Virus record (IMG/VR): IMGVR_UViG_3300023174_000038
Span: 284,702-348,701 of that record
Strand: one strand, 5' to 3'
Length of the DNA stretch: 64,000 bases
This document shows positions 18,472 through 47,671 of this stretch, in pieces. How positions within the stretch are numbered: the first letter of the stretch is position 1; each line of letters begins with the position of its first letter. A program made the position numbers and the translations under genes. A model generated the notes under the pieces. That model was not told where the DNA came from. It saw only the letters and a program-made list of their open reading frames with translations, and ran no database searches.

Positions 18472-18552
18472 TATAAATAGTAGTGTAGCCCACGAGAATC
18501 TGACCTCTCCGACTACTCTAATGCTCATATCTTGAAAGGAAGCACCAGCATG
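18472..18552 (+). promoter_or_regulatory. Late promoter plus conserved structured HEG leader (copy 1)
   Basis: TATAAATA then AGT-GTAG..CAC-GAGA/TCTC-C..CTAC-TCTAA-TGCT..AAGGA-AGCA-CCAGC-ATG. Confidence 0.8.
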
Positions 18553-19383
18553 ACTATTTATTATTTAATGATTAAGACGCATAATATTACGGGTCTTAAA
18601 TATTTGTGTCAAACTAAACAAAAGAATCCTATTAATTACACAGGTTCCGGAGTTGATTGGAAAATACACTTAAAAGAGCACGGCATAGATATTAGGACTA
18701 GTATCATTAAAGCATCAACTGATAAACATATCATCAATGAGTTAGGAAGACATCTCAGTAATCTATGGAAAATAACTACTGCCATGAATGATTACGGGGA
18801 CAGAATATGGGCTAATAAAATACCTGAAACGGGCGGTGGTGCAGGAGTTACTAGTGATATAGCAAAACAAAGATACGTAGATCATCCTGAGTTGATTGAA
18901 CAATTCAAGAAAACAATGACATTGCCGCAAAGTGTTCAGAGAAGAAAAAAATCTAGGGCTGTTACAGTTTCACAACCTGAATTTAGAGAAAAATTCAAAT
19001 CAACAATGAAACTTGCCATGAATAGACCAGAAGTCAGATTGAATAATAGCATCAATCAGACGAAAGCTCAAAATAGACCCGACGTAAAACTGAATAAAAG
19101 TATTAAACAAAAGGAAGCTCAAAATAGACCCGAAGTTAAGATGCTCAAGAGTAAAAATGGCAAAATAGCACAGAATAGACCAGAGGTTAAAGATTCCAAA
19201 TCAGGTAAAAATAATTATAGATACGATCCAACAATTCGCACATTTATTCATTCTGACGGAACGATAGAAAAAATGCCAGCTAACGATTTCAGTCTAAAGT
19301 ACAACTTAGATCGCGGGTGGCTATCCAATGTAATTCTTGGAAATAGAAAAACAATAAAAGGTTGGTCTGTTAAAGTGCAGTAA
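18550..19383 (+). CDS. Free-standing GIY-YIG (Seg-like) homing endonuclease (HEG2)
   Basis: IYYLMIKTHNITGLKYLCQT..YTGSG..WKIHL; ANKIPETGGG; five tandem NRP(E/D)V repeats. Confidence 0.8.
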   Translation: MTIYYLMIKTHNITGLKYLCQTKQKNPINYTGSGVDWKIHLKEHGIDIRTSIIKASTDKHIINELGRHLSNLWKITTAMNDYGDRIWANKIPETGGGAGVTSDIAKQRYVDHPELIEQFKKTMTLPQSVQRRKKSRAVTVSQPEFREKFKSTMKLAMNRPEVRLNNSINQTKAQNRPDVKLNKSIKQKEAQNRPEVKMLKSKNGKIAQNRPEVKDSKSGKNNYRYDPTIRTFIHSDGTIEKMPANDFSLKYNLDRGWLSNVILGNRKTIKGWSVKVQ

Positions 19384-20296
19384 GTTCACAAAGAGTTGCC
19401 GCCAAACTTATTTCAGGGATACCTACCATACTTAAATTAGCTAAACCATTTCTAATAACAATAATACTAGCATCACGCTTTTCATTAGACTTACCCCATA
19501 AATCTAAATTCTGATACATCCATGCATATGTATCTTCAATACGTGTAGGATACAATGCAATATATTGTAATAACTGTTGTCTGCCTTCAAGGATTTTACC
19601 CGCTTTAAACAAAGTAGTTGCTTCTACTAATAACTCATCTTCACCGCTACTTTGAGTTTGTGCTGATAACAATGTTCCTGTACTACTGTTAACTTGTAAT
19701 TGATTTAAACATTTACGCAAGTCTGGATACGTAGCACGTACATAATTATCCAAATCATCTAAATCAAATACAATGTTTTCACTCACTAACACAGTTGCCG
19801 CTCTCGCAGTGAACTCTGTTTTATCTGTTTTTGTAATGTGAAACTCATGGCATCGTGACTTTAATGCAGGGATAATCCTATGTTGATAGTTACATGTTAG
19901 AATAAATCGTGCGGTCATATGATATGCTTCCATATCGTTACGCAATGCCGCTTGCCCAGCTGGTGTCAAATAATCTGCTTCATCTAGTAATACTACTTTG
20001 AAGTTACCGAAAGGCATTGTTTGTACAAAGTTAACAATCTTGTTACGTACAACATCTACACTATTCTCACGTGATGCATTGATTTCTAATACATCATATT
20101 CACTTACATCAAGTTCATGGATCAATACTTTAGCAAGAGTTGTTTTACCTGTACCCGGATCACCTGATAGTAATAGATGAGGGATAGAGCCATCTTTAAC
20201 CCAACCATGTACTTGATTCTTTTGTCGTTCATCTACAAACACGTAGTCTGCTACTGTTGATGGCCTGTATGATTCTACCCAAAGTTTCTTATTCAT
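19370..20296 (-). CDS. Clamp loader ATPase subunit (gp44/RFC-small type)
   Basis: LWVESYRP, GDPGTGKTT, INAS, LLDEAD, SRC motif, PDLRKCLN. Confidence 0.92.
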   Translation of the reverse strand: MNKKLWVESYRPSTVADYVFVDERQKNQVHGWVKDGSIPHLLLSGDPGTGKTTLAKVLIHELDVSEYDVLEINASRENSVDVVRNKIVNFVQTMPFGNFKVVLLDEADYLTPAGQAALRNDMEAYHMTARFILTCNYQHRIIPALKSRCHEFHITKTDKTEFTARAATVLVSENIVFDLDDLDNYVRATYPDLRKCLNQLQVNSSTGTLLSAQTQSSGEDELLVEATTLFKAGKILEGRQQLLQYIALYPTRIEDTYAWMYQNLDLWGKSNEKRDASIIVIRNGLANLSMVGIPEISLAATLCELTAL

Positions 20297-20586
20297 TTTC
20301 TTAACATTTCTAGTGTAATTATGTGAGCTATGCCCTGACCCATATCTTGGTCAGATGGGATGATATGTAAATTGTGATTGTGTCTATCTGTCTTGTCGTC
20401 ATATGCTGAGTATTCTAGGACATATCCACCACTAGCCATATGAATAGTAAAACTCATACCTCTACTATCAAGGCTTGATCCTCTAACAAGAACGCCTCTT
20501 CTGGTATGTTGTTTTGATTCTACTAGACAATCATTATCTTGTGGATACAGAAAATCACGTAGTTTTTGTCTAAACCAATTTATCAT
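20293..20586 (-). CDS. Hypothetical protein
   Basis: 97 aa, ATGA-coupled to clamp loader. Confidence 0.6.
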   Translation of the reverse strand: MINWFRQKLRDFLYPQDNDCLVESKQHTRRGVLVRGSSLDSRGMSFTIHMASGGYVLEYSAYDDKTDRHNHNLHIIPSDQDMGQGIAHIITLEMLRK

Positions 20587-20963
20587 TAAAATACCTTATC
20601 ACCCATTGTTTCATCCTCCATCGGTTCATCCGATACTAATAGTATATCACCGGGATCAACTTTACGCAATGTTTGTTTACCCAAAGGTGTCTCAACTGTA
20701 ATACCCCTTGTCCAACGCCCGTGACTGATAAGAATCCATTTACCAATTTCTAATTGCGGATCATCCTGTTCTGGACCCAAACCATAAATCTTTGCCCAAC
20801 GTGGACGAATGCCTGAACTTTTTTTATCATCATCTGGTATAATGATACCACCTTTACTGATACGTTCATCAAAATGCATCTCGGATACAATGATATGATC
20901 CTTAAAGAATCTCATTGTATCTACTTTAGTAGGGCTAAATGCTGGTTTACTATATTGGTTCAT
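20586..20963 (-). CDS. groES: GroES-like co-chaperonin
   Basis: D.IIV...E..SKGGIIIPD..K; GPE; ..GD.LLV pattern of Cpn10. Confidence 0.75.
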   Translation of the reverse strand: MNQYSKPAFSPTKVDTMRFFKDHIIVSEMHFDERISKGGIIIPDDDKKSSGIRPRWAKIYGLGPEQDDPQLEIGKWILISHGRWTRGITVETPLGKQTLRKVDPGDILLVSDEPMEDETMGDKVF

Positions 20964-21319
20964 TTCTTTTTAAGTTCCTGTAATTTAATTTGTTCAACTT
21001 CTAATTCATCTTCTAACGATTCTTCTAGTTCACGCTCAATTTCATTAAGTTCTGATAAATCAATCGCTGGTTTGGGAGGAGCAGGTGGTGCAGATGTTTT
21101 TGGTTTGTTACGTATTAGTTGTGCTGAACGATTACCTACAGTTTTATTGTATGAATCGTTTACTTTAGTTGTTGCAGTTTTTATAATACGACCTTGTGCA
21201 TCAATTGTGTCTCCACGTGCATTAACTTTCATATTACCCACTGCTCTAGTTTTTTCATTTTTAGCAGTTAGTGCTGCCATGTCAACGATTTTGCCCATTG
21301 CTGTTTTGTAATTAGCCAT
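20960..21319 (-). CDS. Hypothetical protein
   Basis: 119 aa with SD (AGGAG). Confidence 0.6.
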   Translation of the reverse strand: MANYKTAMGKIVDMAALTAKNEKTRAVGNMKVNARGDTIDAQGRIIKTATTKVNDSYNKTVGNRSAQLIRNKPKTSAPPAPPKPAIDLSELNEIERELEESLEDELEVEQIKLQELKKK

Positions 21320-21329
21320 TATGTTCTCC

Positions 21330-21836
21330 TTATTTTAAAAACTCATCTATAGACAAGTCATAGTACAAGCTATTTATACGGTGTATTCCTATTATAAACA
21401 ATACAAAACTAGCTACACTACTACCACGACCTACACCCCAAACAACATTATTCTTACGCATTGTGTCAACTAAGTATTTCAAATACTGCAATAGTACAAA
21501 CATATTACGTTCTTGAAATTTAATTAGTTCATCACCGGCACGTTGCAACTCTGCTTCATTTTTGCATTGATCTAATACCCATTTAGCAATATCAAACTCA
21601 TAATACTCTTTGGGCATATGCCATTTTGTTTGATTTAATCTATCAAACTCTTCCAAAGAAATAGTTGAAGTGGTGTATTGTTTTAGATTTGGGATATTCT
21701 CTAATGAGAGAAACCCATTAAATTCTATGGGACTATCTACTAATGCGTTAGAGATTGTACGTGTTGGGTCTTGTAAGAACAATTCACATAAATCGTTCTG
21801 ATTGTAAATTAATTGACCATACTTATCTGTTTTCAT
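21330..21836 (-). CDS. Stand-alone fragment of a family C (DnaE-like) DNA polymerase
   Basis: VWGVGRGSSVASFVLFIIGIHRINSLYYDLSIDEFLK matches DnaE GRGS..GSLV.Y.LGIT.VDP....L.FERFL; only 168 aa. Confidence 0.8.
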   Translation of the reverse strand: MKTDKYGQLIYNQNDLCELFLQDPTRTISNALVDSPIEFNGFLSLENIPNLKQYTTSTISLEEFDRLNQTKWHMPKEYYEFDIAKWVLDQCKNEAELQRAGDELIKFQERNMFVLLQYLKYLVDTMRKNNVVWGVGRGSSVASFVLFIIGIHRINSLYYDLSIDEFLK

Positions 21837-21842
21837 TTATGT

Positions 21843-21871
21843 ATTATAGCACAACTGTTACTAAAATACAA
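21843..21871 (-). promoter_or_regulatory. Sigma70-type promoter
   Basis: TTGTAT-17 nt-TATAAT with TGn extension. Confidence 0.75.
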
Positions 21872-21884
21872 TATGTTTGGATAA

Positions 21885-22487
21885 TTACTTTTCCTGTTCA
21901 GTTGTAAAAACAATTTCACAATTAGCTGTGTGTTCTTTTTCTTTCCAAACTAAATTATATTCTGCCCAATCTGTTGTGGGTGTTTTAAACAGTTTGACAA
22001 TCTTGTCTTTTCTTATTGATTTTTTGATAGGGTCGGATATAGAAGTTCCACTATCTGTCCACCATCCGGGAGACTCTAACGGACCACGTGGACTTTCAAT
22101 ATCACATATGAATTTAACCTCATCACTTATACGTGAACCCAATGTCATATCAGTAATAATCAATCTACCCTCAGTAATGCTATTGAGTTTAGTTAATAAT
22201 AACAATGTTATAATTTGGTCATAAGGTTCTTCAGGAACAGTACATACCTTAAATCCACATGTGTTATATTTTTCAATAACTTTATGTTCAGTATCCTGAA
22301 CAAAAATACCATTTTCTAAACAATCACTTAGGAAGTATTTTATTCGTTCCATTGCTACATTTTGTTCTCGGATGGATTGAGTTTCTACTTCCATATACAA
22401 TGTTATTGTATATAGATTCATTAAAAATTCTTCCTTAAAATAAACGCCCGCTTGAAATGAAAATTCTCGTTCTATACGTGTGGTCAA
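21885..22487 (-). CDS. Hypothetical protein
   Basis: 200 aa, TTG start. Confidence 0.6.
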   Translation of the reverse strand: MTTRIEREFSFQAGVYFKEEFLMNLYTITLYMEVETQSIREQNVAMERIKYFLSDCLENGIFVQDTEHKVIEKYNTCGFKVCTVPEEPYDQIITLLLLTKLNSITEGRLIITDMTLGSRISDEVKFICDIESPRGPLESPGWWTDSGTSISDPIKKSIRKDKIVKLFKTPTTDWAEYNLVWKEKEHTANCEIVFTTEQEK

Positions 22488-22489
22488 TT

Positions 22490-22723
22490 TTAGCTTTCTT
22501 TTTGAATATTAATTTGTGTCCGATCACCTTGCTTTTTAAGCAGTTCGTCCATTTTGCGGCCGTATTCAGCTTTATAGCTAGCTATAACCATATTTAGTTG
22601 ATGAATCATAGCACTATTTTGCATACGATATGCAAAGTTAAGTTTTTTGGTCAAGTCTGATATAGAACCTTGAAGTTCTTCTAAGGTTTTATCAGATAGT
22701 GATGAAATGAACGGGTGTTCCAT
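22490..22723 (-). CDS. Hypothetical small helical protein
   Basis: 77 aa; TAAATA 5 nt upstream. Confidence 0.6.
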   Translation of the reverse strand: MEHPFISSLSDKTLEELQGSISDLTKKLNFAYRMQNSAMIHQLNMVIASYKAEYGRKMDELLKKQGDRTQINIQKES

Positions 22724-22734
22724 TCAAATATTTA

Positions 22735-24000
22735 TTACCAAGAAGTAAGTGCAATTCTTTTCCAAATGTCCGAACCCACATATGCAGTCGCTACACATGT
22801 ACCGGATGCAGTTGTTAATGTTAATGCTGTACCCGCAACTCCATTTGTCCTAGATTGACTGATAGTGATATTACCACCTGTTCCGATTGCTTTAATGTAA
22901 TATACTGTATTTGCTGTTATTCCACCAAACGTAGTACCAGTAAACACAACGGGAGCATTATTAGCCAATGAAGTTGTATTATTTAAAGTAATATTACCTG
23001 TACTATTAGTAGCTGTTGCTGATTTATCATATGCTGTAGAGTTATAATCATCAGTACACACGTATAGATATGACACTGGGTTAGCATACATTGGAATTGT
23101 TGGGCTAGCATTTCCTGCTAAATTAACATTTGCTCCACCTAATGTTGATGATACTGTAAAATATGTATTAGCTGAAACATTACGTACATAATAAGTTGTA
23201 CCAACAGTAATATTAGCTTCCATAGTAACACCGGTGAATACAATTGGCATATCTGTATACAATTGTACTGTATTGGCAGTATTAAAATAATCTGCGGCAT
23301 TAGAACTAGTTATTGTTAGTTGATTTACCCCATTACTAGTTGCGATATCACCTACCATATCACCTTGATTACCGGTAGGTATAACGTCACGAGTTTTTAT
23401 TTGGGACGCTATTCTATTATTATTAAATGGCTCTACTGTAATTGTATTACCGCAATCAAGCGTACTAAATCTATAGTCTAATTGAGTCACCCCATATGGT
23501 ACAGTAACTGTATTTGTGTTAGCTATATTAGCATAATTTTCTAAAGTAGTTACACCGTCAGTAACTTGACTAGGGAAAGATAATACTGCTAAATTGTTTG
23601 AGACAGCGAGTTGAAGTTGTACATTGCTTTGTGTACTAGTAGGTGCCCATCCTGTAAACTGAATAGTTGTGTTACCTGCGATAGTACCATATTGAACATC
23701 ACCCAATGATACATTTACTGATACAACACCTGATAAAGCATTACCCAAATTATAAGTACTAGCACGAAAACTACGTGTTAATGCATTACTAATAAGAGTA
23801 TTAGCCATATCGTTATTAACAGTAGAATTAGCTAGTGCAGACTTGACTACAACTTTATTTTGTAGGTCTGTTATTTCTGTGCCAGCTGTATTCAAGTTAG
23901 TTCTAATAGATGCAAAGTTATCTCTGAATCCTTGACTATTGTTGTTTATCCCCGGTACAGGGTAATTTACATTGATGCCGTTTGTGTTAATTGTACTCAT
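22735..24000 (-). CDS. Virion structural protein (baseplate/fibre-associated)
   Basis: Thr/Asn/Gly-rich beta protein, N-terminal coiled coil, C-terminal WKRIALTSW; next to baseplate gene. Confidence 0.65.
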   Translation of the reverse strand: MSTINTNGINVNYPVPGINNNSQGFRDNFASIRTNLNTAGTEITDLQNKVVVKSALANSTVNNDMANTLISNALTRSFRASTYNLGNALSGVVSVNVSLGDVQYGTIAGNTTIQFTGWAPTSTQSNVQLQLAVSNNLAVLSFPSQVTDGVTTLENYANIANTNTVTVPYGVTQLDYRFSTLDCGNTITVEPFNNNRIASQIKTRDVIPTGNQGDMVGDIATSNGVNQLTITSSNAADYFNTANTVQLYTDMPIVFTGVTMEANITVGTTYYVRNVSANTYFTVSSTLGGANVNLAGNASPTIPMYANPVSYLYVCTDDYNSTAYDKSATATNSTGNITLNNTTSLANNAPVVFTGTTFGGITANTVYYIKAIGTGGNITISQSRTNGVAGTALTLTTASGTCVATAYVGSDIWKRIALTSW

Positions 24001-24023
24001 ATTTTTGTTGTTCCGTTATATAT

Positions 24024-26501: not shown

Positions 26502-26502
26502 G

Positions 26503-27123
26503 TTATGCGCCTAAATAGTCTAATGCTATATGATAGTGATGTTGTCTATCTTCTAAACCAATAGTACCACCATTAATACGTTTTGTTAATGTAATAAAAT
26601 CATCTTTATCACAGAACTGATTTAGTTTGTTATTATCCCAGAACCAACCAGCACTAGCAACAGCACCATTAGGTGTCTCTAAGTATCTAACTGTATCTTC
26701 AATACTCATGTCTAGTGCTTCAGCAAAACGTGTATAGTTATCACGACCAGTTAACTGAATCAATCCGCGACCTCTGAATCTAAATCCATCACCACTGTTC
26801 TCATCACCGTTTTTCATCCGATTAGCATAAACACGATTAGCAATCATTTCTGGCTTACGTTCATATTGTTTAGCAATATCTTCAGTTGGGAAATATTTTT
26901 TAAATGTACCCATTAATCCTTTTGCTGAATAGTTCAAATTTTCAATTACAGCATTAAAGCCACCACTTTCATGTGCTACTTGTGCTAAAAAGCCCGCAAC
27001 ACGTTTTGGATTGTCAAACATTTCGTAGTATTCTGCTACAGTGTTTAGTGGCTCAACAAAACCCTCTAATGTAGAGCGTTTTGTTTTTGGACACATTGCT
27101 GTTAATAATTCTATTGTTACCAT
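26503..27123 (-). CDS. GH19 lysozyme/chitinase-fold lysin
   Basis: FLAQVAHESGGF, FRGRGLIQLTGRDNY, TKRINGG. Confidence 0.9.
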   Translation of the reverse strand: MVTIELLTAMCPKTKRSTLEGFVEPLNTVAEYYEMFDNPKRVAGFLAQVAHESGGFNAVIENLNYSAKGLMGTFKKYFPTEDIAKQYERKPEMIANRVYANRMKNGDENSGDGFRFRGRGLIQLTGRDNYTRFAEALDMSIEDTVRYLETPNGAVASAGWFWDNNKLNQFCDKDDFITLTKRINGGTIGLEDRQHHYHIALDYLGA

Positions 27124-27132
27124 TTGTTTTCC

Positions 27133-32418: not shown

Positions 32419-32470
32419 ATCTATATCACCTTATTTAGTATTTATCGTTTTCCTATAAACACTATAGCCG

Positions 32471-34754: not shown

Positions 34755-34766
34755 TTTATATTCCTT

Positions 34767-35396: not shown

Positions 35397-35466
35397 AGGT
35401 ATCCTTTTTCTTATATATATTTATCTATTTATGATTTTTATTTGCATTTCGTAAAATGCTTGAGAG

Positions 35467-36420: not shown

Positions 36421-36438
36421 ATTTTTATTCCCATATCA

Positions 36439-36924
36439 TTATTTATCTGACGGTTCTTTACTGGCCAACATCTTAAGCAACTCGTTGCGGTCTAAAGCTT
36501 TACCCTCACCAACTGGCGTGTTCTCTATCTCTTCGGCTTTTCCAGCCAACTTCTGGTCTAACTGTGCTTTCTTAAGCTGTAAATCAATCATCTTTAACTT
36601 CTTATTCAATTTAGCAGTCTTTGCTGTAATAGCATGACCTAACATGTTACTAGCAACACTAAAAATCTCACTACTAAATCTACTATCAACTTGCATACCC
36701 AAATCACTTAAATCTTTAAAACTATCTACAGCCATCTGCGCTAATTCATCTAACTCATTATCACTAGCATCTAATCCACGTACTTGTGGCAATGCATTAT
36801 CAATCTTCTCTAACGCACTTAATGCATCAGTGGTTATATCACGTGCATTTTCTGGTATAGGAATATGCAAGCTGTCAATCTCATCTTGCGGTAGCTCAAA
36901 TAATTCGTTTAATTTTTTCGTCAT
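36439..36924 (-). CDS. Hypothetical helical protein, possibly terminase small subunit-like
   Basis: 161 aa helical/coiled-coil; position near head-completion gene; weak resemblance only. Confidence 0.45.
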
Positions 36925-37586
36925 ATGTTATTTATTCGGTCTCTGTTATCCAAAATGTATTTTACCCTATCCCATGAGATTTGAAGTTTAATAGATATCT
37001 GTCTAATATTTGTACCACTATCAGCTAATTCAAACACTTGAGGGAATAAGTGTTTGTTCTTGTCAATATATGTTGTAACCATCTGTTCTCTTTTTTCATC
37101 AGACCAGGTAGATCCTTTTCTATTTTCTGCAGCCTTCAAGCAATTATTAAGTCTATTTTCTAGTGCCTTTTCAGACCAAACTTTGTATTCTGTTTGGTAT
37201 ATTTTAATTTTTTCTTTAGTGGACTCTTTACGTTTTATACCAGTACGTTGCTCGGTAAATAATTTTTTAGTATGTTCATAATGTTTAAATCCAGATACTC
37301 CTTCTCCACCATCGGTTCTATTTTGTAGTATACCGGTATTATTATTCTTTCTACCATACCATTTAATCATCCTTCGTTCTATTGCAAATGCACCTATTTC
37401 TGTTAAACCGGATTCTAATATAATAATCCTAGACGTGTCTTTTGGAGTTTTAAATCGTTCAGTATTTGCGTGACCCCACGCTCTATATCCGTGTCCTTTA
37501 CCGATGTAATACGGTGTGTTATCTTTCCGTAGATAGGCATATACATAAAACCCCGCAGGATATAATTTTTTATAATAAATAGTCAT
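36921..37586 (-). CDS. Free-standing GIY-YIG homing endonuclease (HEG3)
   Basis: [21 protein letters not shown]....I...[11 protein letters not shown]. Confidence 0.85.
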
Positions 37587-37652
37587 GCTGACATTCCCTT
37601 ACAATGTTAGAGTAGTTGGGGTTCCGACGCCCGCGAACTACACTTTTATTTA
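37584..37652 (-). promoter_or_regulatory. Late promoter plus conserved structured HEG leader (copy 2)
   Basis: TAAATA-AAAGT-GTAGTT-CGC-GGG/CCC-C-AACTAC-TCTA-ACATT..AAGGG-AATGT-CAGC-ATG. Confidence 0.8.
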
Positions 37653-38096
37653 TCTTTTGTTCTTTGGATTACCATTGTGGAAGATATCATCTTCCGTCAA
37701 CACTCTAAAGGTATATCCATGATGCTTACAATAGGCCATTGCAGCTTGCCATTTAGCATGGTTGATTGCTACTACCATTCTATCTTTAGCATTAGCAACT
37801 TTACTTTCTATAAGACTTTGTTTCTTGGGTTTAATCTCAACTATCTCAGCAATATTTTTACCATACTTGTTTTGATAAACTACAAAGAAGTCTGGGATAT
37901 ATGTTTTTGGTTGTCCAGTAAACGGATTACGATAAGGTACACTTATTGCTTCACTAGCCCAATACAATACGTTTTTGTTAGTATCACAAAAATTCATAAA
38001 TGTTAGTTCCCATCCACTACGATATCTAGGGGTATGTTTACCTACATATTTTTGACTATTCTTTGGGGTAAATAAACCTTGAGCAAACTTTGCCAT
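37650..38096 (-). CDS. Head completion nuclease (T4 gp4-like, TnsA-type PD-(D/E)xK)
   Basis: F.PKN..KYVG...YRSGWE..FM.FCD....WASE; YIPDF; EIKP. Confidence 0.85.
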   Translation of the reverse strand: MAKFAQGLFTPKNSQKYVGKHTPRYRSGWELTFMNFCDTNKNVLYWASEAISVPYRNPFTGQPKTYIPDFFVVYQNKYGKNIAEIVEIKPKKQSLIESKVANAKDRMVVAINHAKWQAAMAYCKHHGYTFRVLTEDDIFHNGNPKNKR

Positions 38097-38098
38097 GA

Positions 38099-38461: not shown

Positions 38462-38464
38462 AAG

Positions 38465-39655: not shown

Positions 39656-39673
39656 TTAATATATTAAAATATA

Positions 39674-40312
39674 TTAAGCTTGACCGGCACCAATACCCGT
39701 TGTTGATGTACCACCTAAAGCACGACCAACACTTGTGCCAACACCAGAACTCAACGGTGATTGAACCGCATTGTCAAAGCGAATTGATAATTGTATTGTT
39801 ACAACTTCATTAGAGCTATAAGCCAAATTATTGTAATTTGCTGCCTGCAAGAAACAACCATATACTTCCCAAGTTTCTAGTACGACCGGAGTAGCAGTAC
39901 CGTTACCACCGTCTAAGATTTCAATATTTGTTTGAAATTTATAGTCTTGACCAGTTGCGGCTGAAGCTTGTTCAACAAAGTCCATTTGCTTCTGTAATTG
40001 TTGACCAACTAATGCTGAAACACTACCTGAAGCATCATCTCTAACATTAACAGTTAGTGGTTGCCATTCGTGTCTGCCTGCCAAATACATAGTAGAGTTA
40101 TAAACTGGGATATTAATTTCACCAAAACTAACTGATGGGCGTGTTACATCAATAACTTGCTTTGTTAATTCATTAGTAGCGTTATTAGTACCAAAGTTTA
40201 GAAAATTAACTCTAAAACGATATTGTAGTTTGGGCATTAGCAAGCCCTGATTTCCGCCTGCGTTGTCTGACGCTACGGTCATGTTAAACAATGATTGTGA
40301 GGCTATTGCCAT
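39674..40312 (-). CDS. Tail tube protein (gp19-like)
   Basis: PKLQYRFRV, RPSVSF.EI, W.PLTVNVRDD, ETWEVYGCF, I.LSIRFDNA. Confidence 0.85.
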   Translation of the reverse strand: MAIASQSLFNMTVASDNAGGNQGLLMPKLQYRFRVNFLNFGTNNATNELTKQVIDVTRPSVSFGEINIPVYNSTMYLAGRHEWQPLTVNVRDDASGSVSALVGQQLQKQMDFVEQASAATGQDYKFQTNIEILDGGNGTATPVVLETWEVYGCFLQAANYNNLAYSSNEVVTIQLSIRFDNAVQSPLSSGVGTSVGRALGGTSTTGIGAGQA

Positions 40313-40349
40313 GTTTTTCTCCTGTTATTAATATTTATCTATTTAAATA

Positions 40350-40369
40350 GATACCCCTCTCGGGGTATC
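40350..40369 (-). terminator. Terminator-like hairpin after sheath gene
   Basis: GATACCCC-GAGA-GGGGTATC on minus strand. Confidence 0.65.
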
Positions 40370-40377
40370 ATATTTTA

Positions 40378-43300: not shown

Positions 43301-43965
43301 CTTTGCCAAGCAGGTGTACCTACTGCGACCCATGTATTAGATGTGGTTTTATAATAATATGTTTTATATGTTGATGCAGGTGTTTCATTAATCTGTATTG
43401 CATTTATAGCATAATCACCAATGTTACCTATACTACTTAATGGAACCCCTGCTGATAAATCACTAGCCATTGTTATAACAATAGGATTTTGTAAAGTGAA
43501 TTGGCCAGTTGTTTGATTAAACTCATATATACCCCATGTGCTTGTTGTAGTATCTAACCACCATGTACCAGCATCTGGATTACCAGTTGGACGACCAGTT
43601 TGACCAACTAAACTAGCTAGGTCAATGTCTGCACGTAAAACATAACAACGGTTTGTTACACCTAATGTACTATAGGCTGCTAACAATCCATATTCATTTA
43701 ACTCATAACCTTGAATTGGTGTACCATTTGCTGTTGTATAAAAGAATGGACTACCATACAAGTTTACCAAATCTCGTTGACTTGTTACTTGGAATAACTT
43801 ATTTGCGTTAGCGGCCGTTGTTGCGGCTGCTACACCTGTTCCAGATGCATCAGCTTTGTTTTGCGCTGTTGCTAATAGAATAAGTGGGACTGAATTCGTT
43901 GGGGCTGGAAGATATTGACTCTGGTCAATGATCGTTACTTCTACGCCTGGAGATGTTAATGCCAT
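40378..43965 (-). CDS. Contractile tail sheath protein (gp18-like) with insertion domains
   Basis: L.SPGVEVT.IDQS start; PWLAAAG..RG, INP, LDRTNVARL, FVFEPND, CDESNNT...IDRNELW.DVAVEPVK.AEFIYIP. Confidence 0.93.
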   Translation of the reverse strand: MALTSPGVEVTIIDQSQYLPAPTNSVPLILLATAQNKADASGTGVAAATTAANANKLFQVTSQRDLVNLYGSPFFYTTANGTPIQGYELNEYGLLAAYSTLGVTNRCYVLRADIDLASLVGQTGRPTGNPDAGTWWLDTTTSTWGIYEFNQTTGQFTLQNPIVITMASDLSAGVPLSSIGNIGDYAINAIQINETPASTYKTYYYKTTSNTWVAVGTPAWQRDIPTVQGSVSNPTLVAGNTFTINLSGLAGVTATISVPASPNNTVAGVAGVINALDWPYLSASVRSGKLCIFSSQVLSAGSSNGRLVLAEGTGTPLATMGINVSVQSTYYQPLSQYGTSAQMPLWTSSQSAPRPTGSVWIKVGSAGTGLDPIMAEFNGVTQTWLNKNVSLYESDWAASAGIDATGGQAIPANTVYAQYGFNGTGSAVPIYIWERIATGATIVTGDVTDPEFNSGRYYMNVYVSVPGSSTLSSAYPFTLADNTTATNFVTAWAAANIPYTTASVTSDGAIQLSHTEGGTIILDDTVNSSYLSTGVSNGLIETAGFVIGTTSGVKFGPFVTSVFTGVSGTSSPGANATFNIIVSSGAYIINGAGVNAGGSGYTVGDLITIDGADLGGTSITNDLIVEVTAVSGGVATAITYSLGLPTAKYRTQLSNWVEFTYISNEGQPAVAPANDTNWYYSVVDQVDIMINFSGAWYGYGNRDYDSSGFPLPSGTNETDPNGPLISATAPTTQSDGTTALVYGDLWIDTSDLENYPVINRWQSVSGTDQWVLIDNTDQTSSTGVVFADARWSSNQNTISPVDDPIPTIVSLLTSNNLDLDAPDPTLYPSGMLLFNTRRNGYNVKQYMVDYFNSTSFPDDTLPTYTSTWVTVSGNQTNGAPYMGRKAQRAMVVQSLNAAIATNTAIRDEDNFFNLIATPNYPELQPGMITLNNDRGQTGYILGDTPMRLPDSATAIQAWANNEAGASSTGEEGLVNRDTYMGLFYPSGLATDLQGNQVAVPPSYMMLRTFLRNDTISYPWLAAAGTRRGTIDNALSIGYVDATTGEWQSIKTRLGIRDVLYINFINPLVFFTGVGLLNYGNKTSFNSSSALDRTNVARLVAYIRRQLTLAARPFVFEPNDALTRNQIAGVVQTLMVDLVAKRGLYDYLVVCDESNNTPARIDRNELWIDVAVEPVKAAEFIYIPVRILNTGELGGQ

Positions 43966-44085
43966 TTTATGTTTCCTTTATGTAAAATTTTAAGGTTTAC
44001 TACCTGTTTGCATACTAATATTTATCAAATACCTTTAAAAAGACATACTTACCGTGCCTTTAAAGGTTCCTAGAGTAAATACACA

Positions 44086-44430
44086 ATGAGACCTATATGC
44101 AATACTTGTGGAAAGAATCACTGTGCCGTTAACTATAAACGGCTAGGAGTAACACACTATAGAAGCATGTGCGATGAGTGTGGACGAAAGAAAAATAAAC
44201 TTAAACCCAGAACTCCTAAATGGAAAAGTAAAGGTTATAAGAAAAAAACCGCATGTGATTTATGCGGCTTTAAGGGTTTATTTACTAGTCAAATCACCGT
44301 CTTTCATATTGACGGTAATTTAGAAAACACTGATTTGGTTAACTTGCGTAGTATATGTCTTAACTGTGTAGAAGTAGTTAAAAAGAAAGAAGTTAATTGG
44401 AAACGAGGGGACTTACAGGTTGACCACTGA
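44086..44430 (+). CDS. Small HNH/zinc-finger protein
   Basis: CxxC pairs and HIDGNLEN...NLRSIC.NC. Confidence 0.7.
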   Translation: MRPICNTCGKNHCAVNYKRLGVTHYRSMCDECGRKKNKLKPRTPKWKSKGYKKKTACDLCGFKGLFTSQITVFHIDGNLENTDLVNLRSICLNCVEVVKKKEVNWKRGDLQVDH

Positions 44431-45045
44431 GTTAACTTGTTTATGTAACTCATCAATTGATCCATTGTTATCAATATAATAGTCATACAACAATCCTACA
44501 CTACTATACTCACTAGCGTGTACGGCATAGTTACCTAACTCTACCATAGCTTTTAATCTTTGTTCACTACCTTCAGGCTCATTATTATAGTCTACTGCGG
44601 CACTATACCATATAGGACGTTCACCCCTGCTTACACGCATTGTGATACCACCTACACTTTTGATAGAATTAACTTCATTAGCAAAACGGCAATCGGTAAT
44701 AACAATGTTTTCATCTGTTTGGCGTAGCTTATTTTCTACACTAGCTACCCAAATATCTTTATGAAACCCATTACGACATACTTCTGTACCCCAGTATTGT
44801 AATACCCATCTTGGAGTAATATCCATTCCTAATCGTTCACTCCACCATTCATCACGTTGTTCACGCCAAGCTCTACTGGTTTTAGTAGAACCTTCTAAGT
44901 ATTCTCTATTCCAACCAAATACTGCGGCTACTGCGTCTTTTAAACTTGCCGCAAAACTAACACGTTTGAACCCGTGAAATGTAGTAAGATAGTTTGCAAT
45001 AGTGTCCTTGCCCGAACCGATTTGGCCAGTGATTCCTATTATCAT
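44413..45045 (-). CDS. Deoxynucleoside monophosphate kinase (T4 gp1-like)
   Basis: Likely start MIIGITGQIGSGKDT; SFAASLKD, R.VLQYWGTE, ITDCRF.NE, HASE. Confidence 0.9.
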   Translation of the reverse strand: MIIGITGQIGSGKDTIANYLTTFHGFKRVSFAASLKDAVAAVFGWNREYLEGSTKTSRAWREQRDEWWSERLGMDITPRWVLQYWGTEVCRNGFHKDIWVASVENKLRQTDENIVITDCRFANEVNSIKSVGGITMRVSRGERPIWYSAAVDYNNEPEGSEQRLKAMVELGNYAVHASEYSSVGLLYDYYIDNNGSIDELHKQVNSVVNL

Positions 45046-45049
45046 ATGG

Positions 45050-45097
45050 TAACTCCTGTAATACATTTATTATACTACAGGAGAGTTGTAAAGTAAA
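45050..45097 (-). promoter_or_regulatory. Sigma70-type promoter inside an RBS-occluding hairpin
   Basis: TTTACT-17-TATAAT; stem CTCCTGTAGTA/TATTACAGGAG covers the SD. Confidence 0.7.
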
Positions 45098-45106
45098 GTG
45101 TTTAGG

Positions 45107-45904
45107 TTAACCTTGCACCCATGTCAAGGGTTGTGATCCATCTACATACCGTTTTAGTTCTTCAATGAGTTCTTGCTGTAGTTGTTTAGATTCTGCTTTC
45201 ATTGCCGCACCATTTAAACTTGTGCCGCCACCCGGACCTGCAATACTAGCAAACTTCTCACGTGCTTCACCAATAATACCTTTTAATACAGCAAATACCC
45301 AATCACCAATCCAAACACCAGTGCTTGGATCTTGTAATAATACTTCTTGTGTTCTTTGTACATCTGCCCAAATTAATATACGTTCACCGGATCCTTTTGG
45401 ATCACGAACAATACGTAATACTTTGGTTACTGGATCAAATGTATAAACAACATATCCACCAAACATACGTGCGGCTAATTCAACATAACCAGCATAAAAG
45501 TCATATGTTGCCATACCACCAGCATAGTTATAGTTTAGCAAATATGTGTTTAGAATAGCTGAACTGAATGGGTCAAAACTACTACTTGAAGGGCCTGTTT
45601 CTAGTCCAACTGTTCTACGATATAAACATCTGACGTTAATGAATTCTTGTGGTAGTGTATATGTATCAACATTCTTTTCTATTGTGAAAAGAGTATAAGA
45701 TTCTGCCGTAGCATTTTGCGCTCGTTGACGATAGACTTTGATAGCATAGTTGTATGCTGCCTCATAGTGTTGAGGATCTAATTCCAAATCAATGATACCA
45801 TCTCCTAGACGATATCTAACGTTTTGGAATAATGCTTGTTTTAGTTCATCTAGTGTTAGACCAGATGGAGTAGATAGTATATTTGCAGTAGCTGATATTG
45901 TCAT
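45107..45904 (-). CDS. Neck/head-tail adaptor protein (gp13-like)
   Basis: RLGDGIIDLELDPQHYE, G..GE.R.KF..I.GP.GGT.LNG..MK.E, PL.WV.G. Confidence 0.8.
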   Translation of the reverse strand: MTISATANILSTPSGLTLDELKQALFQNVRYRLGDGIIDLELDPQHYEAAYNYAIKVYRQRAQNATAESYTLFTIEKNVDTYTLPQEFINVRCLYRRTVGLETGPSSSSFDPFSSAILNTYLLNYNYAGGMATYDFYAGYVELAARMFGGYVVYTFDPVTKVLRIVRDPKGSGERILIWADVQRTQEVLLQDPSTGVWIGDWVFAVLKGIIGEAREKFASIAGPGGGTSLNGAAMKAESKQLQQELIEELKRYVDGSQPLTWVQG

Positions 45905-45942
45905 AGTTGTTTACCTGTATGTTGTATTTAATGTAAAAATTC

Positions 45943-46890
45943 TTATGGTGTGCCACCGGTTGCTCCCAGCTGTGTAGCTTGAACAGTCATAGGTCCACGT
46001 GTTGTTGCAGTAGCAGTATCAGTTGCATAAATTATCCGCTGTGTTGTGGCTTGATTAGATCCGTATACCCATCCATAACTAGTATCACCGGTACCACATA
46101 TATACGGTGCAGGATTGGCCAACGGGCCTCTAATGCTAGCGGTTGCTGTATCCGTTGCATATGTTATTCTTTCAACCATGCTAGAATTGTAATTTCCTCC
46201 AAAAAACCAGCCATACGTAGAATTATCAGTAGTTGCGGCAAGGGCATATCTTACACCACTAAGTGGACCACGTGTACTTGCGGTAGCAGTATCTGTTGCA
46301 TAGGTGATACGAGAGACTTTAGATTGGGATACACCACCGGCAAACCAGCCGGATGTACTAAGCCCGGTTGCGGCATTCCACTGCACAGCAAAACTTAATG
46401 GGCCACGTGTGGTTGCATTAGCAGTATCTGTTGCGTATGTAGTTCTGTCTACGGTTGATATGGTTCCGGGACCAATTGGGTAATTATATCCGCCACCCCA
46501 CCAGCCATATGTAGCACCATCTGTGGAGGCGGCCAACTGTCTTACTCCACCGGATAATGATCCTCTAAGGCTGGCTGTTGCAGTATCAGTTGAAAAAGTA
46601 ACTCTTTGAACCGCAGAGATAATAGAAGATTGAAAGCTTGATTGCTGTCCTCCTCCCCACCATCCATATGTTAAAGTGCCTGCGGCTGTTAGCTGTCTTG
46701 CTATAAGGGATAATGGGCCCCGTATTGAGCTAGAGGCAGTATCTGTTGCAAAAGTTATACGCTGTACGGTGGATATAGAACCATATCCGCCACCCCACCA
46801 ACCTGCAGTAGCGGTGGACGGAGGTGCCGGAGGTGCTACTATACCCACTCCACCACTAAATGAAATTCCACCTGTTATCGTTATTGACAT
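45943..46890 (-). CDS. Six-repeat Kelch/beta-propeller-like protein (paralogue)
   Basis: Six GW..GG...RIT(F/Y)ATDTATAS.RGPL units; visibly more GC-rich than flanks. Confidence 0.8.
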   Translation of the reverse strand: MSITITGGISFSGGVGIVAPPAPPSTATAGWWGGGYGSISTVQRITFATDTASSSIRGPLSLIARQLTAAGTLTYGWWGGGQQSSFQSSIISAVQRVTFSTDTATASLRGSLSGGVRQLAASTDGATYGWWGGGYNYPIGPGTISTVDRTTYATDTANATTRGPLSFAVQWNAATGLSTSGWFAGGVSQSKVSRITYATDTATASTRGPLSGVRYALAATTDNSTYGWFFGGNYNSSMVERITYATDTATASIRGPLANPAPYICGTGDTSYGWVYGSNQATTQRIIYATDTATATTRGPMTVQATQLGATGGTP

Positions 46891-46941
46891 AATTGTTACC
46901 CTTAAATACGTATATTGTATTTATCGGGCAACAATTATTAC

Positions 46942-47604
46942 TTACAAATCGCCTTCTTTACGATTCTCACTATAATATGCATCAAAACTACCAATATCTT
47001 TCATTTTACAATTATTTCCGTGCCATCTTACGTAATTACCTTTAGAAATAATTTTATCGCAATATTCACACGTAATCTGATACTCAGGTTTACACATTGG
47101 ATTGTTACTACCGGTCTTTAATGCATTTAATTTTGAAAGTTTTGGATTTTTCTTTCCGCGCATTGCACTTACTTTTCCAAACATTGGATTTTTATTACCA
47201 ACATTAGCAGAATTTCTAGCACTAAGTTGCGGATTCTTTTTTCCATACATGGGATGTTTATCACCAGCCCTGAGTGAGTTTCTTTCTCCTACTGTAGTAT
47301 TTTTTCTTCCGTAACAAGGATGATTCTCACCTCTATCCGAACCACCTGTTTCAGGTATCTTGTTTGCCCACTCATTACTTTTAACAATATTCCACAGTGT
47401 ACTGTAGTATCTCCCCCAAATACTCAATTCTTCTTTAGAGTGACATTCCCTAATAATTTCAGTATCAATGAATTTACCAAACTCTTTTAAATGAGATTTC
47501 CATTCTAATCCTGAACCCAAATATTTGTAGGGATCTTTAGTTGTTTTGCCGAGATATTTAATCCCAGTAACTTGGTGGGTCTTTTTGTATAGATAAATAA
47601 TCAT
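46942..47604 (-). CDS. Free-standing GIY-YIG (Seg-like) homing endonuclease (HEG4)
   Basis: IYLYKKTHQVTGIKYLGKT..YLGSG..WK.HL; ANKIPETGG; NUMOD3-like G..(H/N)PM(Y/F)GK repeats; C-terminal CEYC. Confidence 0.85.
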   Translation of the reverse strand: MIIYLYKKTHQVTGIKYLGKTTKDPYKYLGSGLEWKSHLKEFGKFIDTEIIRECHSKEELSIWGRYYSTLWNIVKSNEWANKIPETGGSDRGENHPCYGRKNTTVGERNSLRAGDKHPMYGKKNPQLSARNSANVGNKNPMFGKVSAMRGKKNPKLSKLNALKTGSNNPMCKPEYQITCEYCDKIISKGNYVRWHGNNCKMKDIGSFDAYYSENRKEGDL

Positions 47605-47671
47605 GCTGATTGCTCCTTCAAAGCATTAGAGTAACTGGGAAGTCTAATTCCGCGAGTTACACTATTATTTA
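47602..47671 (-). promoter_or_regulatory. Late promoter plus conserved structured HEG leader (copy 3)
   Basis: TAAATA-ATAGT-GTAACT-CGC-GGAA/TTCC-C-AGTTAC-TCTAA-TGCT..AAGG-AGCA-ATCAGC-ATG. Confidence 0.8.

What the first reader, a model, noticed from the sequence alone, without database searches (positions are those of the whole stretch)
18472..47671. Covarying structured RNA leader shared by three separate homing endonuclease genes
Seen at 18472-18552 (+), 37584-37652 (-) and 47602-47671 (-): TAAATA, AGT, stem P1 (GTAG-CC/GA-CTAC, GTAGTT/AACTAC, GTAACT/AGTTAC), internal loop C-R-C opposite C, stem P2 (GAGA/TCTC, GGG/CCC, GGAA/TTCC) with a variable 6-8 nt loop, invariant TCTA(A), stem P3 (TGCT/AGCA or ACATT/AATGT) that encloses or overlaps the SD, then CAGC-ATG-A(C/T)T-ATT-TAT. 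Compensatory changes occur in all three stems. Known: T4 HEGs use RBS-sequestering hairpins, but there the late promoter lies within the hairpin region to relieve it; here the promoter is upstream of the whole fold. Inference: a dedicated regulatory RNA (protein-binding or autoregulatory switch) or an RNA cofactor of the nuclease.
Basis: partly seen in the sequence, partly recalled or inferred. Interest (0 to 1): 0.86.

Follow-up and report, generated by a model that had tools for sequence, protein, structure and literature searches.

The report
Antisense RNA module fronting homing endonucleases
The three look-alike "leaders" are copies of a widespread ~80-bp cassette placed in front of many unrelated homing-endonuclease genes of uncultured T4-like phages, and its conserved fold fits the opposite strand, pointing to a small antisense RNA that would cover the nuclease gene's ribosome-binding site.

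Summary
The window holds exactly three copies (covariance-model E 1e-21, 3e-19, 4e-12). The same module recurs in more than 170 distinct copies on IMG/VR viral contigs, in front of GIY-YIG, HNH and PD-(D/E)XK-type homing endonucleases. All three stems covary strongly. Rfam and cultured-phage genomes have no match.

The interpretation needs revision. Non-Watson-Crick cells in the stems are almost all A.C on the mRNA strand, which is G.U on the complementary strand. Pairing is 99.0-99.5% read as antisense and about 90% read as sense. Consensus energy is -19.8 against -12.0 kcal/mol.

The invariant TATTTAT after the start codon is conserved in all three reading frames. It is an inverted copy of the phage's late-promoter core, 5 nt before a conserved T|G. 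Invariant CAG and CTA pair to give an 8-bp antisense hairpin. The P1/P2 hairpin is followed on that strand by a U-rich tail.

Best reading (inferred, no transcript data): face-to-face late promoters make the endonuclease mRNA and a ~67-nt cis-antisense RNA covering its 5' UTR and Shine-Dalgarno, as in IS10 RNA-OUT. A nuclease cofactor or cognate autoregulation is unlikely. Dassa et al. 2009 noted similar hairpins.

The parts
18473..18561 (+). Module copy c1, from the sense ATAAATA (18473-18479) to TATTTAT (18555-18561). P1 is 18485-18490 with 18511-18516. P2 is 18494-18497 with 18506-18509. P3 is 18518-18525 with 18541-18548. CAGC is 18546-18549.
   Evidence: R1 E 3.9e-12; R2 66.8 bits
18473..18549 (-). 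Predicted antisense RNA of c1 (about 77 nt). Its inferred start is the G opposite C18549 and its U-rich tail is opposite the sense promoter. Its promoter core ATAAATA lies on the - strand at 18561-18555.
   Evidence: inferred; no transcript data
18550..19383 (+). Homing-endonuclease-like gene of c1 (277 aa, Seg-like family).
   Evidence: fold hits I-TevI catalytic domain prob 0.90, I-HmuI DNA-binding prob 1.00
37575..37653 (-). Module copy c2. Sense ATAAATA is 37653-37647. P1 is 37641-37636 with 37617-37612. Extended P3 is 37610-37588. CAGC is 37590-37587. ATG is 37586-37584. TATTTAT is 37581-37575.
   Evidence: E 1.1e-21; 96.5 bits
37587..37653 (+). Predicted antisense RNA of c2 (67 nt). Its promoter core ATAAATA lies on the + strand at 37575-37581.
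   Evidence: inferred (MFE -17.9, z -2.3)
36921..37586 (-). GIY-YIG-type homing endonuclease gene of c2 (221 aa).
   Evidence: phrog_314 homing endonuclease, weak; family profile hits PDB GIY-YIG protein E 8e-4
47593..47672 (-). Module copy c3. Sense ATAAATA is 47672-47666. P1 is 47660-47655 with 47636-47631. CAGC is 47608-47605. ATG is 47604-47602. TATTTAT is 47599-47593.
   Evidence: E 3.1e-19; 86.9 bits
47605..47672 (+). Predicted antisense RNA of c3 (68 nt). Its promoter core ATAAATA lies on the + strand at 47593-47599.
   Evidence: inferred
46942..47604 (-). Seg-like homing endonuclease gene of c3 (220 aa, NUMOD3).
   Evidence: (NUMOD3 E 6.5e-6)

Best explanation
Each copy is a compact expression-and-control cassette carried at the 5' end of a free-standing homing endonuclease gene in T4-like phages.

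Two late-type promoter cores (ATAAATA) face each other 65-85 bp apart. The left one starts the endonuclease mRNA at about the first base of P1. The right one lies inside codons 2-4 of the endonuclease gene and points backwards.

The right promoter would start a short antisense RNA at the G opposite the last C of CAGC. That RNA (64-86 nt, median 67) would fold into three parts:
- an 8-bp 5' hairpin whose loop is the complement of the Shine-Dalgarno sequence;
- a one-base linker;
- the P1'/P2' hairpin followed by a U-rich tail (ACU-UU-UAUUUAU). The tail is the complement of the sense promoter and looks like an intrinsic terminator.

This RNA is fully complementary to the whole 5' UTR of the late endonuclease mRNA, up to position -1. 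By loop-loop and then full pairing it would block ribosome binding or trigger duplex cleavage. Closely opposed promoters could add transcriptional interference. The result would be low nuclease output.

Shown here: the module, its spread, the covariation, the strand on which the fold is selected, and the frame-independent inverted promoter motif.

Inferred: that the inverted motif fires, that the RNA terminates at the tail, and that its role is repression of the endonuclease.
For: (1) Strand of selection, first set. In 109 distinct copies the 18 pairs are 99.0% paired on the antisense strand (WC 1726, G.U 189, A.C 7, other 13). The same pairs read as sense are 89.6% paired.

(2) Strand of selection, independent set. 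In 73 further copies with entirely different P1 arms, pairing is 99.5% and P1' is 99.8% paired, including 48 G.U cells. Five of 6 P1 pairs are compensatory. Per distinct P1 arm combination, sense mismatches are A.C 21 against G.U 3.

(3) Energies. RNAalifold on identical columns gives -19.82 for antisense and -12.02 kcal/mol for sense. Single-sequence folds favour antisense in 92 of 99 copies.

(4) CAG and CTA. The invariant sense CAG (of CAGC) and CTA (of CTCTAA) pair with an invariant A.C in sense, which is G.U in antisense. This extends P3' to 8 bp and explains two otherwise unexplained invariant blocks.

(5) TATTTA. It is kept in about 98% of copies although it sits in reading frame 2, 0 or 1 in 56, 10 and 14 ORFs, and the start codon floats around it. 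Its complement is the same ATAAATA that precedes the tail sheath, tail tube and other genes of this phage. It lies 5 nt before a conserved T|G (T 101/109, G 106/109). This matches the geometry of the sense promoter relative to the first G of P1.

(6) Terminator-like end. The antisense terminal hairpin has a mean dG of -10.8 kcal/mol, followed by 5-7 U in the next 9 nt. The two bases after the sense ATAAATA are AA in 52 of 112 module copies against 0 of 28 generic ATAAATA sites in the window. That makes the antisense tail more U-rich.

(7) Downstream genes. The same module precedes nucleases of unrelated superfamilies: NUMOD3/GIY-YIG, several HNH families, TnsA-like and DUF559. This argues for a generic controller rather than a partner of one enzyme.

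(8) Precedent. An antisense RNA over a homing endonuclease gene exists in the T4-like cyanophage S-PM2 (CfrI; PMC2984593).
Against: - No transcript data exist. Promoter use, start site and termination are inferred from motifs only.
- The simple terminator scan does not call the hairpin, because of its internal loop and AU-rich base.
- The first base of the antisense ATAAATA is A in only 79% of copies, against 95% for the sense promoter.
- About a third of copies have a divergent neighbour gene. Where the gap is only 14-33 nt there is no separate promoter, so an efficient terminator there would silence that gene. The antisense transcript may therefore serve, at least in part, as that gene's leader.
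- If the start is at the predicted G, the RNA stops 1 nt short of the AUG in the main class.
- Both promoters are of the same temporal class, so the regulatory logic (dampening rather than switching) is conjecture.
Confidence: 0.5

Rival explanations
1. Sense-strand cis-regulatory leader. The late mRNA starts with the P1/P2 hairpin, acting as a 5' stabiliser or the binding site of a common phage or host protein. P3 presents or masks the Shine-Dalgarno to set translation.
For: The fixed 2-nt spacing between ATAAATA and AGTG puts the likely start at the first base of P1 (T4 promoter geometry from PMC2988020). The SD lies in the P3 loop and 3' arm. Covariation is also significant when read as sense: 94.9% paired against 78.7% shuffled.
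Against: On this strand the non-canonical cells are A.C, not G.U: 80 against 13 in set 1, 21 against 3 per P1 arm type in set 2, and 48 P1 cells in A11. Sense consensus energy is much poorer. This view does not explain the frame-independent TATTTAT, the invariant CAG/CTA with an invariant A.C, or the AA preference after the promoter.
Confidence: 0.12
2. Outward-facing promoter plus structured leader or insulator for the neighbouring gene. The inverted ATAAATA restores transcription of the gene next to the insertion. The antisense fold is that transcript's 5' stabiliser or attenuator, not a regulator of the endonuclease.
For: 35-50 of 101 evaluable copies have a divergent ORF of 80 aa or more starting within 150 nt. 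With gaps of 14-33 nt there is no separate promoter: c1 ORF 18458-18186, L063 306 aa, L103 300 aa, and L106, a gp41-like gene with a split intein. With gaps of 40 nt or more, 10 of 19 have their own ATAAATA. T4 endonuclease genes are known to embed promoters for neighbours (PMC2988022).
Against: At least 28 copies abut the stop codon of a co-oriented upstream gene, c2 and c3 among them. There an outward transcript has no gene to serve and would be antisense to that gene unless terminated. This view does not need the full complementarity to the SD, nor the conserved anti-SD loop.
Confidence: 0.15
3. Classical T4 temporal control. In read-through transcripts ATAAATA pairs with TATTTAT (helix P0) and closes a three-way junction over the start region. 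Late transcripts lack the 5' arm and are translated.
For: The two 7-mers are perfect complements. The MFE of c1 and c3 with upstream sequence contains P0, extended to 9-10 bp with a G-C to A-T change between them. The mechanism is known for I-TevI, segB and mobE (PMC2988022).
Against: Across 94 copies P0 has a mean pair probability of 0.20 and a median of 0.009. Mutating it changes predicted start-site accessibility only from 0.436 to 0.451. Flanking bases are mostly non-complementary. c2 and c3 sit among late structural genes, so read-through transcripts are late too. It does not explain the strand asymmetry.
Confidence: 0.04
4. A recombination adapter, PeSL-like. The conserved 80 bp mainly serves as shared homology that lets endonuclease ORFs be swapped or moved between sites. 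Structure is secondary. This is not exclusive of the other readings.
For: The same P2 or P3 haplotype occurs with different endonuclease families. For example, the P2 type with loop TTGGCG occurs with GIY-YIG, HNH and a third family. The 3' boundary of conservation at TATTTAT is sharp, with ORFs fused in three frames. Solo or decayed modules occur in L008, L113, L149 and L106. PeSL promoter-terminator motifs play this role in T4-like phages (PMC4122927).
Against: Homology alone does not produce compensatory changes or a strand-specific wobble pattern.
Confidence: 0.08
5. A single-stranded DNA hairpin, attC-like, recognised by a recombinase or by replication or packaging machinery.
For: Strand-specific folding with tolerated G.T mismatches is also seen in folded DNA sites. 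This is general knowledge and was not tested here.
Against: No recombinase is associated with the module. Promoter cores sit at both ends at fixed start-site geometry. A U(T)-rich tail and an SD-complementary loop fit RNA.
Confidence: 0.03

Closest known systems
IS10/Tn10 RNA-OUT / RNA-IN antisense control (my own knowledge of the literature; not retrieved here)
   Same: A selfish element's DNA-cutting enzyme gene carries face-to-face promoters at its 5' end. The outward one makes a short, stable stem-loop RNA (about 70 nt) complementary to the 5' end and ribosome-binding region of the enzyme mRNA. This keeps expression low and allows inhibition between copies.
   Different: There is no sequence or structural homology. 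Here there are two hairpins plus a terminator-like tail, both promoters are T4 late-type, and the hosts are phage homing endonucleases of several families. Nothing has been shown experimentally.
RBS-sequestering hairpins of T4-family homing endonucleases (I-TevI, I-TevII/III, segB, Aeh1 mobE; PMC2988022)
   Same: A late promoter lies immediately upstream of the endonuclease ORF. RNA structure around the SD is used to restrain a potentially harmful nuclease.
   Different: In those systems one stable hairpin on the mRNA contains the promoter, so late transcripts escape. Here the stable stems lie downstream of the promoter, the SD hairpin is weak on the mRNA, the fold is selected on the other strand, and there is a second, inverted promoter core.
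Conserved hairpins upstream of free-standing endonucleases in 'fractured genes' (Dassa et al. 2009, PMC2677866)
   Same: The sources are environmental T4-like phage sequences. Hairpins occur in 15 of 16 endonuclease 5' UTRs and 10 include the TATAAATA-type late promoter. [quoted passage not shown] The endonucleases are GIY-YIG and Vsr-like. A hairpin is retained after loss of the endonuclease.
   Different: Identity with this module could not be verified, because the figures and supplement are not held. The one split-intein locus found here (L106) carries a different upstream sequence. That paper read the hairpins as mRNA translational hairpins. It reported no covariation, strand analysis, P3, inverted promoter or HNH association.
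CfrI antisense RNA of cyanophage S-PM2 (Millard et al. 2010, as summarised in PMC2984593)
   Same: It is an experimentally detected antisense RNA overlapping a homing endonuclease gene in a T4-like phage, and it is co-expressed with that gene.
   Different: CfrI is about 225 nt, links the endonuclease gene to psbA, and is a single locus of unknown function. It is not a portable 5' module shared by many endonuclease families.
PeSL composite promoter-terminator cassettes of T4-like phages (PMC2839356, PMC4122927)
   Same: These are short conserved promoter-plus-stem-loop units repeated through T4-like genomes. They flank variable genes and act as points of genetic exchange.
   Different: PeSLs combine a terminator with an early sigma-70-type promoter on one strand, and they flank ORFans in hyperplastic regions. 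Here late-type cores sit on both strands, the start codon is included, and the association is strictly with endonuclease genes.

Membership tests
Any Rfam 15 family | Match to a curated covariance model at gathering score, or at least a suggestive E-value, on either strand | tested here: not met
   Whole window at gathering thresholds: only freshwater-2 at 54860-54938, nothing at the three sites. Permissive scan of c3 on both strands: only noise, E above 8.
T4-type RBS-sequestering hairpin with embedded late promoter (I-TevI/segB/mobE type) | The late promoter lies inside the inhibitory hairpin, so late transcripts cannot form it | tested here: not met
   P1, P2 and P3 all lie downstream of ATAAATA. 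The only promoter-containing helix is 7 A-U pairs with a median pair probability of 0.009.
T4-type RBS-sequestering hairpin with embedded late promoter (I-TevI/segB/mobE type) | A very stable mRNA hairpin sequesters the SD | tested here: not met
   Sense P3 has a mean MFE of -2.4 kcal/mol. The SD is mostly in the loop. The extended sense helix carries 1-2 A.C mismatches.
IS10 RNA-OUT-like cis-antisense control | Face-to-face promoters giving 5'-overlapping transcripts | tested here: inconclusive
   An inverted ATAAATA core is present in 79-98% of copies depending on position. It has the same 5-nt spacing to a conserved T|G as the sense promoter and is independent of reading frame. Promoter activity was not measurable here.
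IS10 RNA-OUT-like cis-antisense control | The antisense RNA has a conserved stable stem-loop structure of its own | tested here: met
   99.0% and 99.5% of cells are paired on the antisense strand in two sets. Covariation scores are 0.463 and 0.691 against 0.138 and 0.213 in shuffles. G.U greatly outnumbers A.C. Consensus energy is -19.8 against -12.0 kcal/mol.
IS10 RNA-OUT-like cis-antisense control | Complementarity covers the ribosome-binding region of the nuclease/transposase mRNA | tested here: met
   The predicted RNA spans from position -1 of the AUG to beyond the sense start site. The SD complement sits in the P3' loop. The AUG itself is only covered if initiation is 1-3 nt earlier than predicted.
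IS10 RNA-OUT-like cis-antisense control | The antisense RNA is made and lowers enzyme expression | not testable with these tools
   Needs transcript mapping and reporter assays.
Intrinsic (Rho-independent) terminator, for the antisense 3' end | A G+C-rich hairpin immediately followed by a U tract | tested here: inconclusive
   Hairpin dG has a mean of -10.8 kcal/mol and 5-7 U follow in the next 9 nt. The stem base is AU-rich with an internal loop, and the consensus scan does not call it.
Free-standing homing endonuclease genes (downstream ORFs) | A recognised endonuclease catalytic or DNA-binding domain | tested here: met
   Of 87 distinct downstream ORFs, 32 have NUMOD3 and about 24 have HNH, HNH_3 or HNH_5. 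Others have GIY-YIG, I-TevI DNA-binding, TnsA-like or DUF559. c3 has NUMOD3. The c2 family hits a PDB GIY-YIG protein. The c1 model resembles I-TevI and I-HmuI modules, with weak E-values.
PeSL cassettes | An early sigma-70-type promoter joined to a terminator stem-loop on the same strand | tested here: not met
   The promoter cores are the late-type ATAAATA that precedes structural genes. No sigma-70-like site lies at the module. The hairpin follows the sense promoter rather than preceding it.

The most novel reading that the evidence does not exclude
A previously unrecognised, abundant family of phage small RNAs. Every homing-endonuclease cassette of this kind would encode its own ~67-nt late antisense RNA with an exposed anti-Shine-Dalgarno loop. 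Many copies per genome share conserved blocks, so the RNAs could act in trans as a copy-number-sensing brake on all endonucleases of unrelated families. This would be a phage-wide 'multicopy inhibition' of selfish genes. Alternatively they could act more broadly on SD-containing mRNAs. The variable P2 and P3 loops would give each cassette its own specificity.
Probability: 0.15. Interest if true: 0.85.

Novelty: new variant of a known kind. Interest (0 to 1): 0.7.

Why it matters
Homing endonucleases must be expressed enough to spread and little enough not to harm their phage. The only established solutions in T4-type phages are mRNA hairpins with embedded promoters, and autorepression.

A portable cassette shared by GIY-YIG, HNH and PD-(D/E)XK-type endonucleases would be a different solution. 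It would bring its own promoter, ribosome-binding site, first codons and, apparently, an antisense RNA. That would be a general, transposon-like answer (IS10-like) to the same problem. It would also explain how unrelated nucleases can invade late operons in either orientation.

It is also a textbook case where wobble asymmetry assigns the functional strand.

Finally, it makes testable predictions for lake metatranscriptomes and for simple T4-based reporter assays.

Tried and rejected
1. ATAAATA:TATTTAT long-range helix as classical temporal control. This was attractive at first but is thermodynamically weak and has no extension or covariation.

2. Rfam membership. There is none.

3. Cultured relatives. 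Megablast of 3 kb and blastn of the module against INPHARED phages gave no match.

4. Literal sequence search of the literature for the conserved blocks. Only unrelated primer hits were found.

5. Link to the Dassa et al. hairpins through split inteins. The endonuclease remnant between the L106 halves has a different upstream sequence. A search for relatives found only near-identical contigs. Identity of the two elements therefore remains unverified.

6. A fourth window copy at 10645-10724 (E 0.29). It lies inside coding sequence and is a chance match.

7. Scan for copies lacking the promoter A (BNNAGTG...). Seventy-six hits were found, but nearly all are chance 15-mers in unrelated genes. The few real ones show CTAAATA, or spacing of 0, 1 or 10 nt.

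8. The consensus terminator scan does not flag the hairpin.

9. A profile-profile link of the c1/c3 protein family to the c2 GIY-YIG family was weak, at probability 20%. A sequence search of PDB with the c1/c3 family found nothing. A structure model was used instead.

10. Self-cleaving ribozyme, K-turn and tRNA-like readings were considered from the anatomy. They were dropped for lack of the defining cores and of any Rfam signal.

Full report
WHAT IS THERE

The three sites share one architecture: ATAAATA, two bases, AGT, a 6-bp stem P1, a C-R-C/C internal loop, a 3-4-bp stem P2 with a variable loop, TCTAA, a short hairpin P3 around the Shine-Dalgarno sequence, CAGC, the start codon, and TATTTAT.

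A covariance model built only from other loci (R1) finds exactly these three in the window, at E 1.1e-21, 3.1e-19 and 3.9e-12. The next hit (E 0.29, 10645-10724) lies inside a coding region. Rfam has nothing on either strand. Cultured phage genomes have no match.

HOW WIDESPREAD

A second scan for copies with a different P1 again hit the limit and added 62 distinct full copies. Model searches raised these to 109 and 73 distinct aligned sequences.

Neighbouring genes are T4-like: UvsY, T4-type terminase, gp15, UvsW. In the window they are the clamp loader, tail sheath and tail tube.

ATAAATA, usually GATAAATA, precedes the tail sheath, tail tube and about twenty other genes in the window. It behaves as this phage's late-type promoter core. 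T4 late promoters are a TATA box about one helical turn upstream of the start site (PMC2988020).

Almost every true copy has ATAAATA exactly 2 nt before AGTG. Rare variants have CTAAATA or other spacing.

WHAT FOLLOWS THE MODULE

Of 87 distinct downstream ORFs, 32 have NUMOD3 and about 24 have HNH-type domains. Others have GIY-YIG, I-TevI DNA-binding, TnsA-like or DUF559 (Vsr-like) domains.

The window's three proteins fit this picture:
- c3 has NUMOD3.
- The c2 family profile hits a solved GIY-YIG protein.
- A model of c1 (pLDDT 80) most resembles the I-HmuI DNA-binding module and the I-TevI catalytic domain.

One leader in front of mechanistically unrelated nucleases argues against an RNA cofactor or cognate autoregulation.

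COVARIATION

Read as mRNA, 94.9% of cells pair against 78.7% in shuffles. Thirteen of 17 pairs have double-sided changes, with 273 such cells against 54.5 in shuffles. Register shifts drop pairing to 21-61%.

P3 alone shows about 16 different compensatory arm types. The second set replaces P1 wholesale, for example GAGGAT/ACCCTC, GCCGAT/ACCGGC and GCAGGT/ACCTGC.

WHICH STRAND

The exceptions to Watson-Crick pairing are the key.
- On the mRNA strand they are A.C/C.A in 80 cells and G.U in 13.
- In antisense orientation the same 18 pairs give WC 1726, G.U 189, A.C 7 and other 13. That is 99.0% paired, against 89.6% if read as sense.
- In the independent set pairing is 99.5%. P1' is 99.8% paired with 48 G.U cells that would be A.C mismatches in the mRNA.
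- Per distinct P1 arm combination, sense mismatches are A.C 21 against G.U 3.
- RNAalifold on identical columns gives -19.82 kcal/mol for antisense and -12.02 for sense.
- Single-sequence folds favour antisense in 92 of 99 copies.

Single-step intermediates of a selected RNA helix should be G.U on the strand that folds. The fold under selection is therefore on the strand complementary to the endonuclease mRNA.

WHAT THE ANTISENSE READING EXPLAINS

1. CAG of CAGC and CTA of CTCTAA pair, with an invariant G.U, to extend P3' to 8 bp.

2. TATTTA(T) is conserved at the nucleotide level. It is read as I-Y, Y-L or x-F in 56, 10 and 14 ORFs, and the start codon can even lie upstream of CAGC. Its complement is the late-promoter core, followed after 5 nt by a conserved T|G. 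This mirrors the sense side, where ATAAATA-N5 is followed by the first G of P1.

3. On the antisense strand the P1'/P2' hairpin (mean -10.8 kcal/mol) is followed by ACU-NN-UAUUUAU, with 5-7 U in the next 9 nt.

4. The NN are AA on the sense strand in 52 of 112 copies, against 0 of 28 generic promoter sites. This enriches U in that tail.

The predicted RNA is 64-86 nt (median 67). In the window it spans 37587-37653 (+), 47605-47672 (+) and 18549-18473 (-). It would have a 5'-terminal hairpin whose loop is the SD complement, and a terminator-like 3' hairpin. It would be complementary to the entire 5' UTR of the late endonuclease mRNA.

MECHANISM (INFERRED)

Face-to-face late promoters would make the endonuclease mRNA and a stable cis-antisense RNA. 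The antisense RNA would pair with the SD region through loop-loop contacts, and perhaps provoke duplex cleavage. Promoter interference could add to this.

The analogy is IS10 RNA-OUT/RNA-IN (my own knowledge, not retrieved here). Antisense transcription over a homing endonuclease gene has one precedent in a T4-like phage, CfrI of S-PM2 (PMC2984593).

CAVEATS AND ALTERNATIVES

- No transcript data exist.
- The terminator scan does not call the hairpin.
- The first A of the inverted core is less conserved, at 79%.
- About a third of copies face a divergent gene. With gaps of 14-33 nt that gene has no promoter of its own. Examples include c1, whose 90-aa ORF 18458-18186 starts 14 nt after the tail. 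With longer gaps about half have their own ATAAATA. The backward promoter may therefore also, or instead, feed the neighbour.
- The classical T4 scheme is not met. The promoter-containing helix ATAAATA:TATTTAT has a median pair probability of 0.009 and hardly changes predicted accessibility.
- The module may additionally serve as shared homology for cassette shuffling, like PeSLs (PMC4122927). Identical leader haplotypes occur with different endonuclease families, and solo remnants exist.

PRIOR WORK

Dassa et al. 2009 (PMC2677866) reported hairpins upstream of free-standing GIY-YIG and Vsr-like endonucleases in ocean and lake metagenomes. Ten of them contained the late-promoter motif, and two conserved motifs were complementary on the stem. 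The authors read them as translational mRNA hairpins.

This is probably the same or a related element. I could not verify that.

Not found in the searched literature or in Rfam:
- the three-helix architecture;
- its spread to HNH and other families;
- the inverted promoter;
- the antisense-strand selection.

VERDICT

I rate the element a new variant of a known kind: cis-antisense or structured control of a selfish nuclease gene. Interest is 0.7.

Noticed in passing
window 54860-54938 (-): A freshwater-2 RNA motif (RF02980, 67.2 bits, E 4.6e-8) sits directly after an ATAAATA promoter core at 54953 (-). It lies upstream of a 464-aa ORF (53468-54862) with no PHROG match. The motif therefore looks like a 5' leader of a late phage gene.
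   Followed up: partly
window 37650-38096 (-): A TnsA-like endonuclease N-terminal domain protein (E 3.5e-19) lies immediately upstream of module c2. The same family is the upstream neighbour of the module in 6 of 41 other loci. It may be a recurrent partner or a tandem selfish gene.
   Followed up: partly
window 36929-36935 (-) and 46918-46924 (-): A further sense-strand ATAAATA sits at the 3' end of endonuclease genes c2 and c3, just before the next gene's start. Across loci, 15 of 87 endonuclease ORFs have one within -12 to +55 of the stop, against 0.6 expected. The cassettes appear to carry a promoter for the downstream gene.
   Followed up: partly
window 18186-18458 (-): A 90-aa ORF with no family match starts 14 nt after the antisense tail of c1, with an AAAGA-type ribosome site. 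The c1 endonuclease is inserted in opposite orientation between the clamp-loader gene and this ORF.
   Followed up: partly
L106:13114-13834 (+); L023:9352-9783 (+): A gp41-1-like split intein (N half 45% and C half 71% identical to the remembered sequences) has a truncated NUMOD-like ORF between the halves. An NrdJ-1-like intein has halves only 40 nt apart. Both lie on contigs that also carry the module elsewhere.
   Followed up: partly
L008:773-794, L113:1146-1216, L149:5083-5157, L106:12132-12232, L124:7647-7723: These are solo or decayed modules. The promoter plus P1/P2 hairpin is kept, while P3, CAGC, TATTTAT and the endonuclease are lost or replaced. They look like footprints of endonuclease loss.
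   Followed up: no
L018 (11.8 kb), L063, L072, L065, L061, L026: Several contigs carry two or three modules within a few kb, with different P2 and P3 loops. The window has three in 64 kb. The same loop haplotype also recurs with different endonuclease families on different contigs.
   Followed up: no
module columns AG (before P1) / CU (after P1) / AG (of CAGC): The invariant CU after P1 can pair either with the invariant AG before P1, extending the terminal hairpin to the U tail, or with the AG of CAGC, extending P3. The two are mutually exclusive, and both partners are invariant. A conformational switch is possible but cannot be tested by covariation.
   Followed up: no
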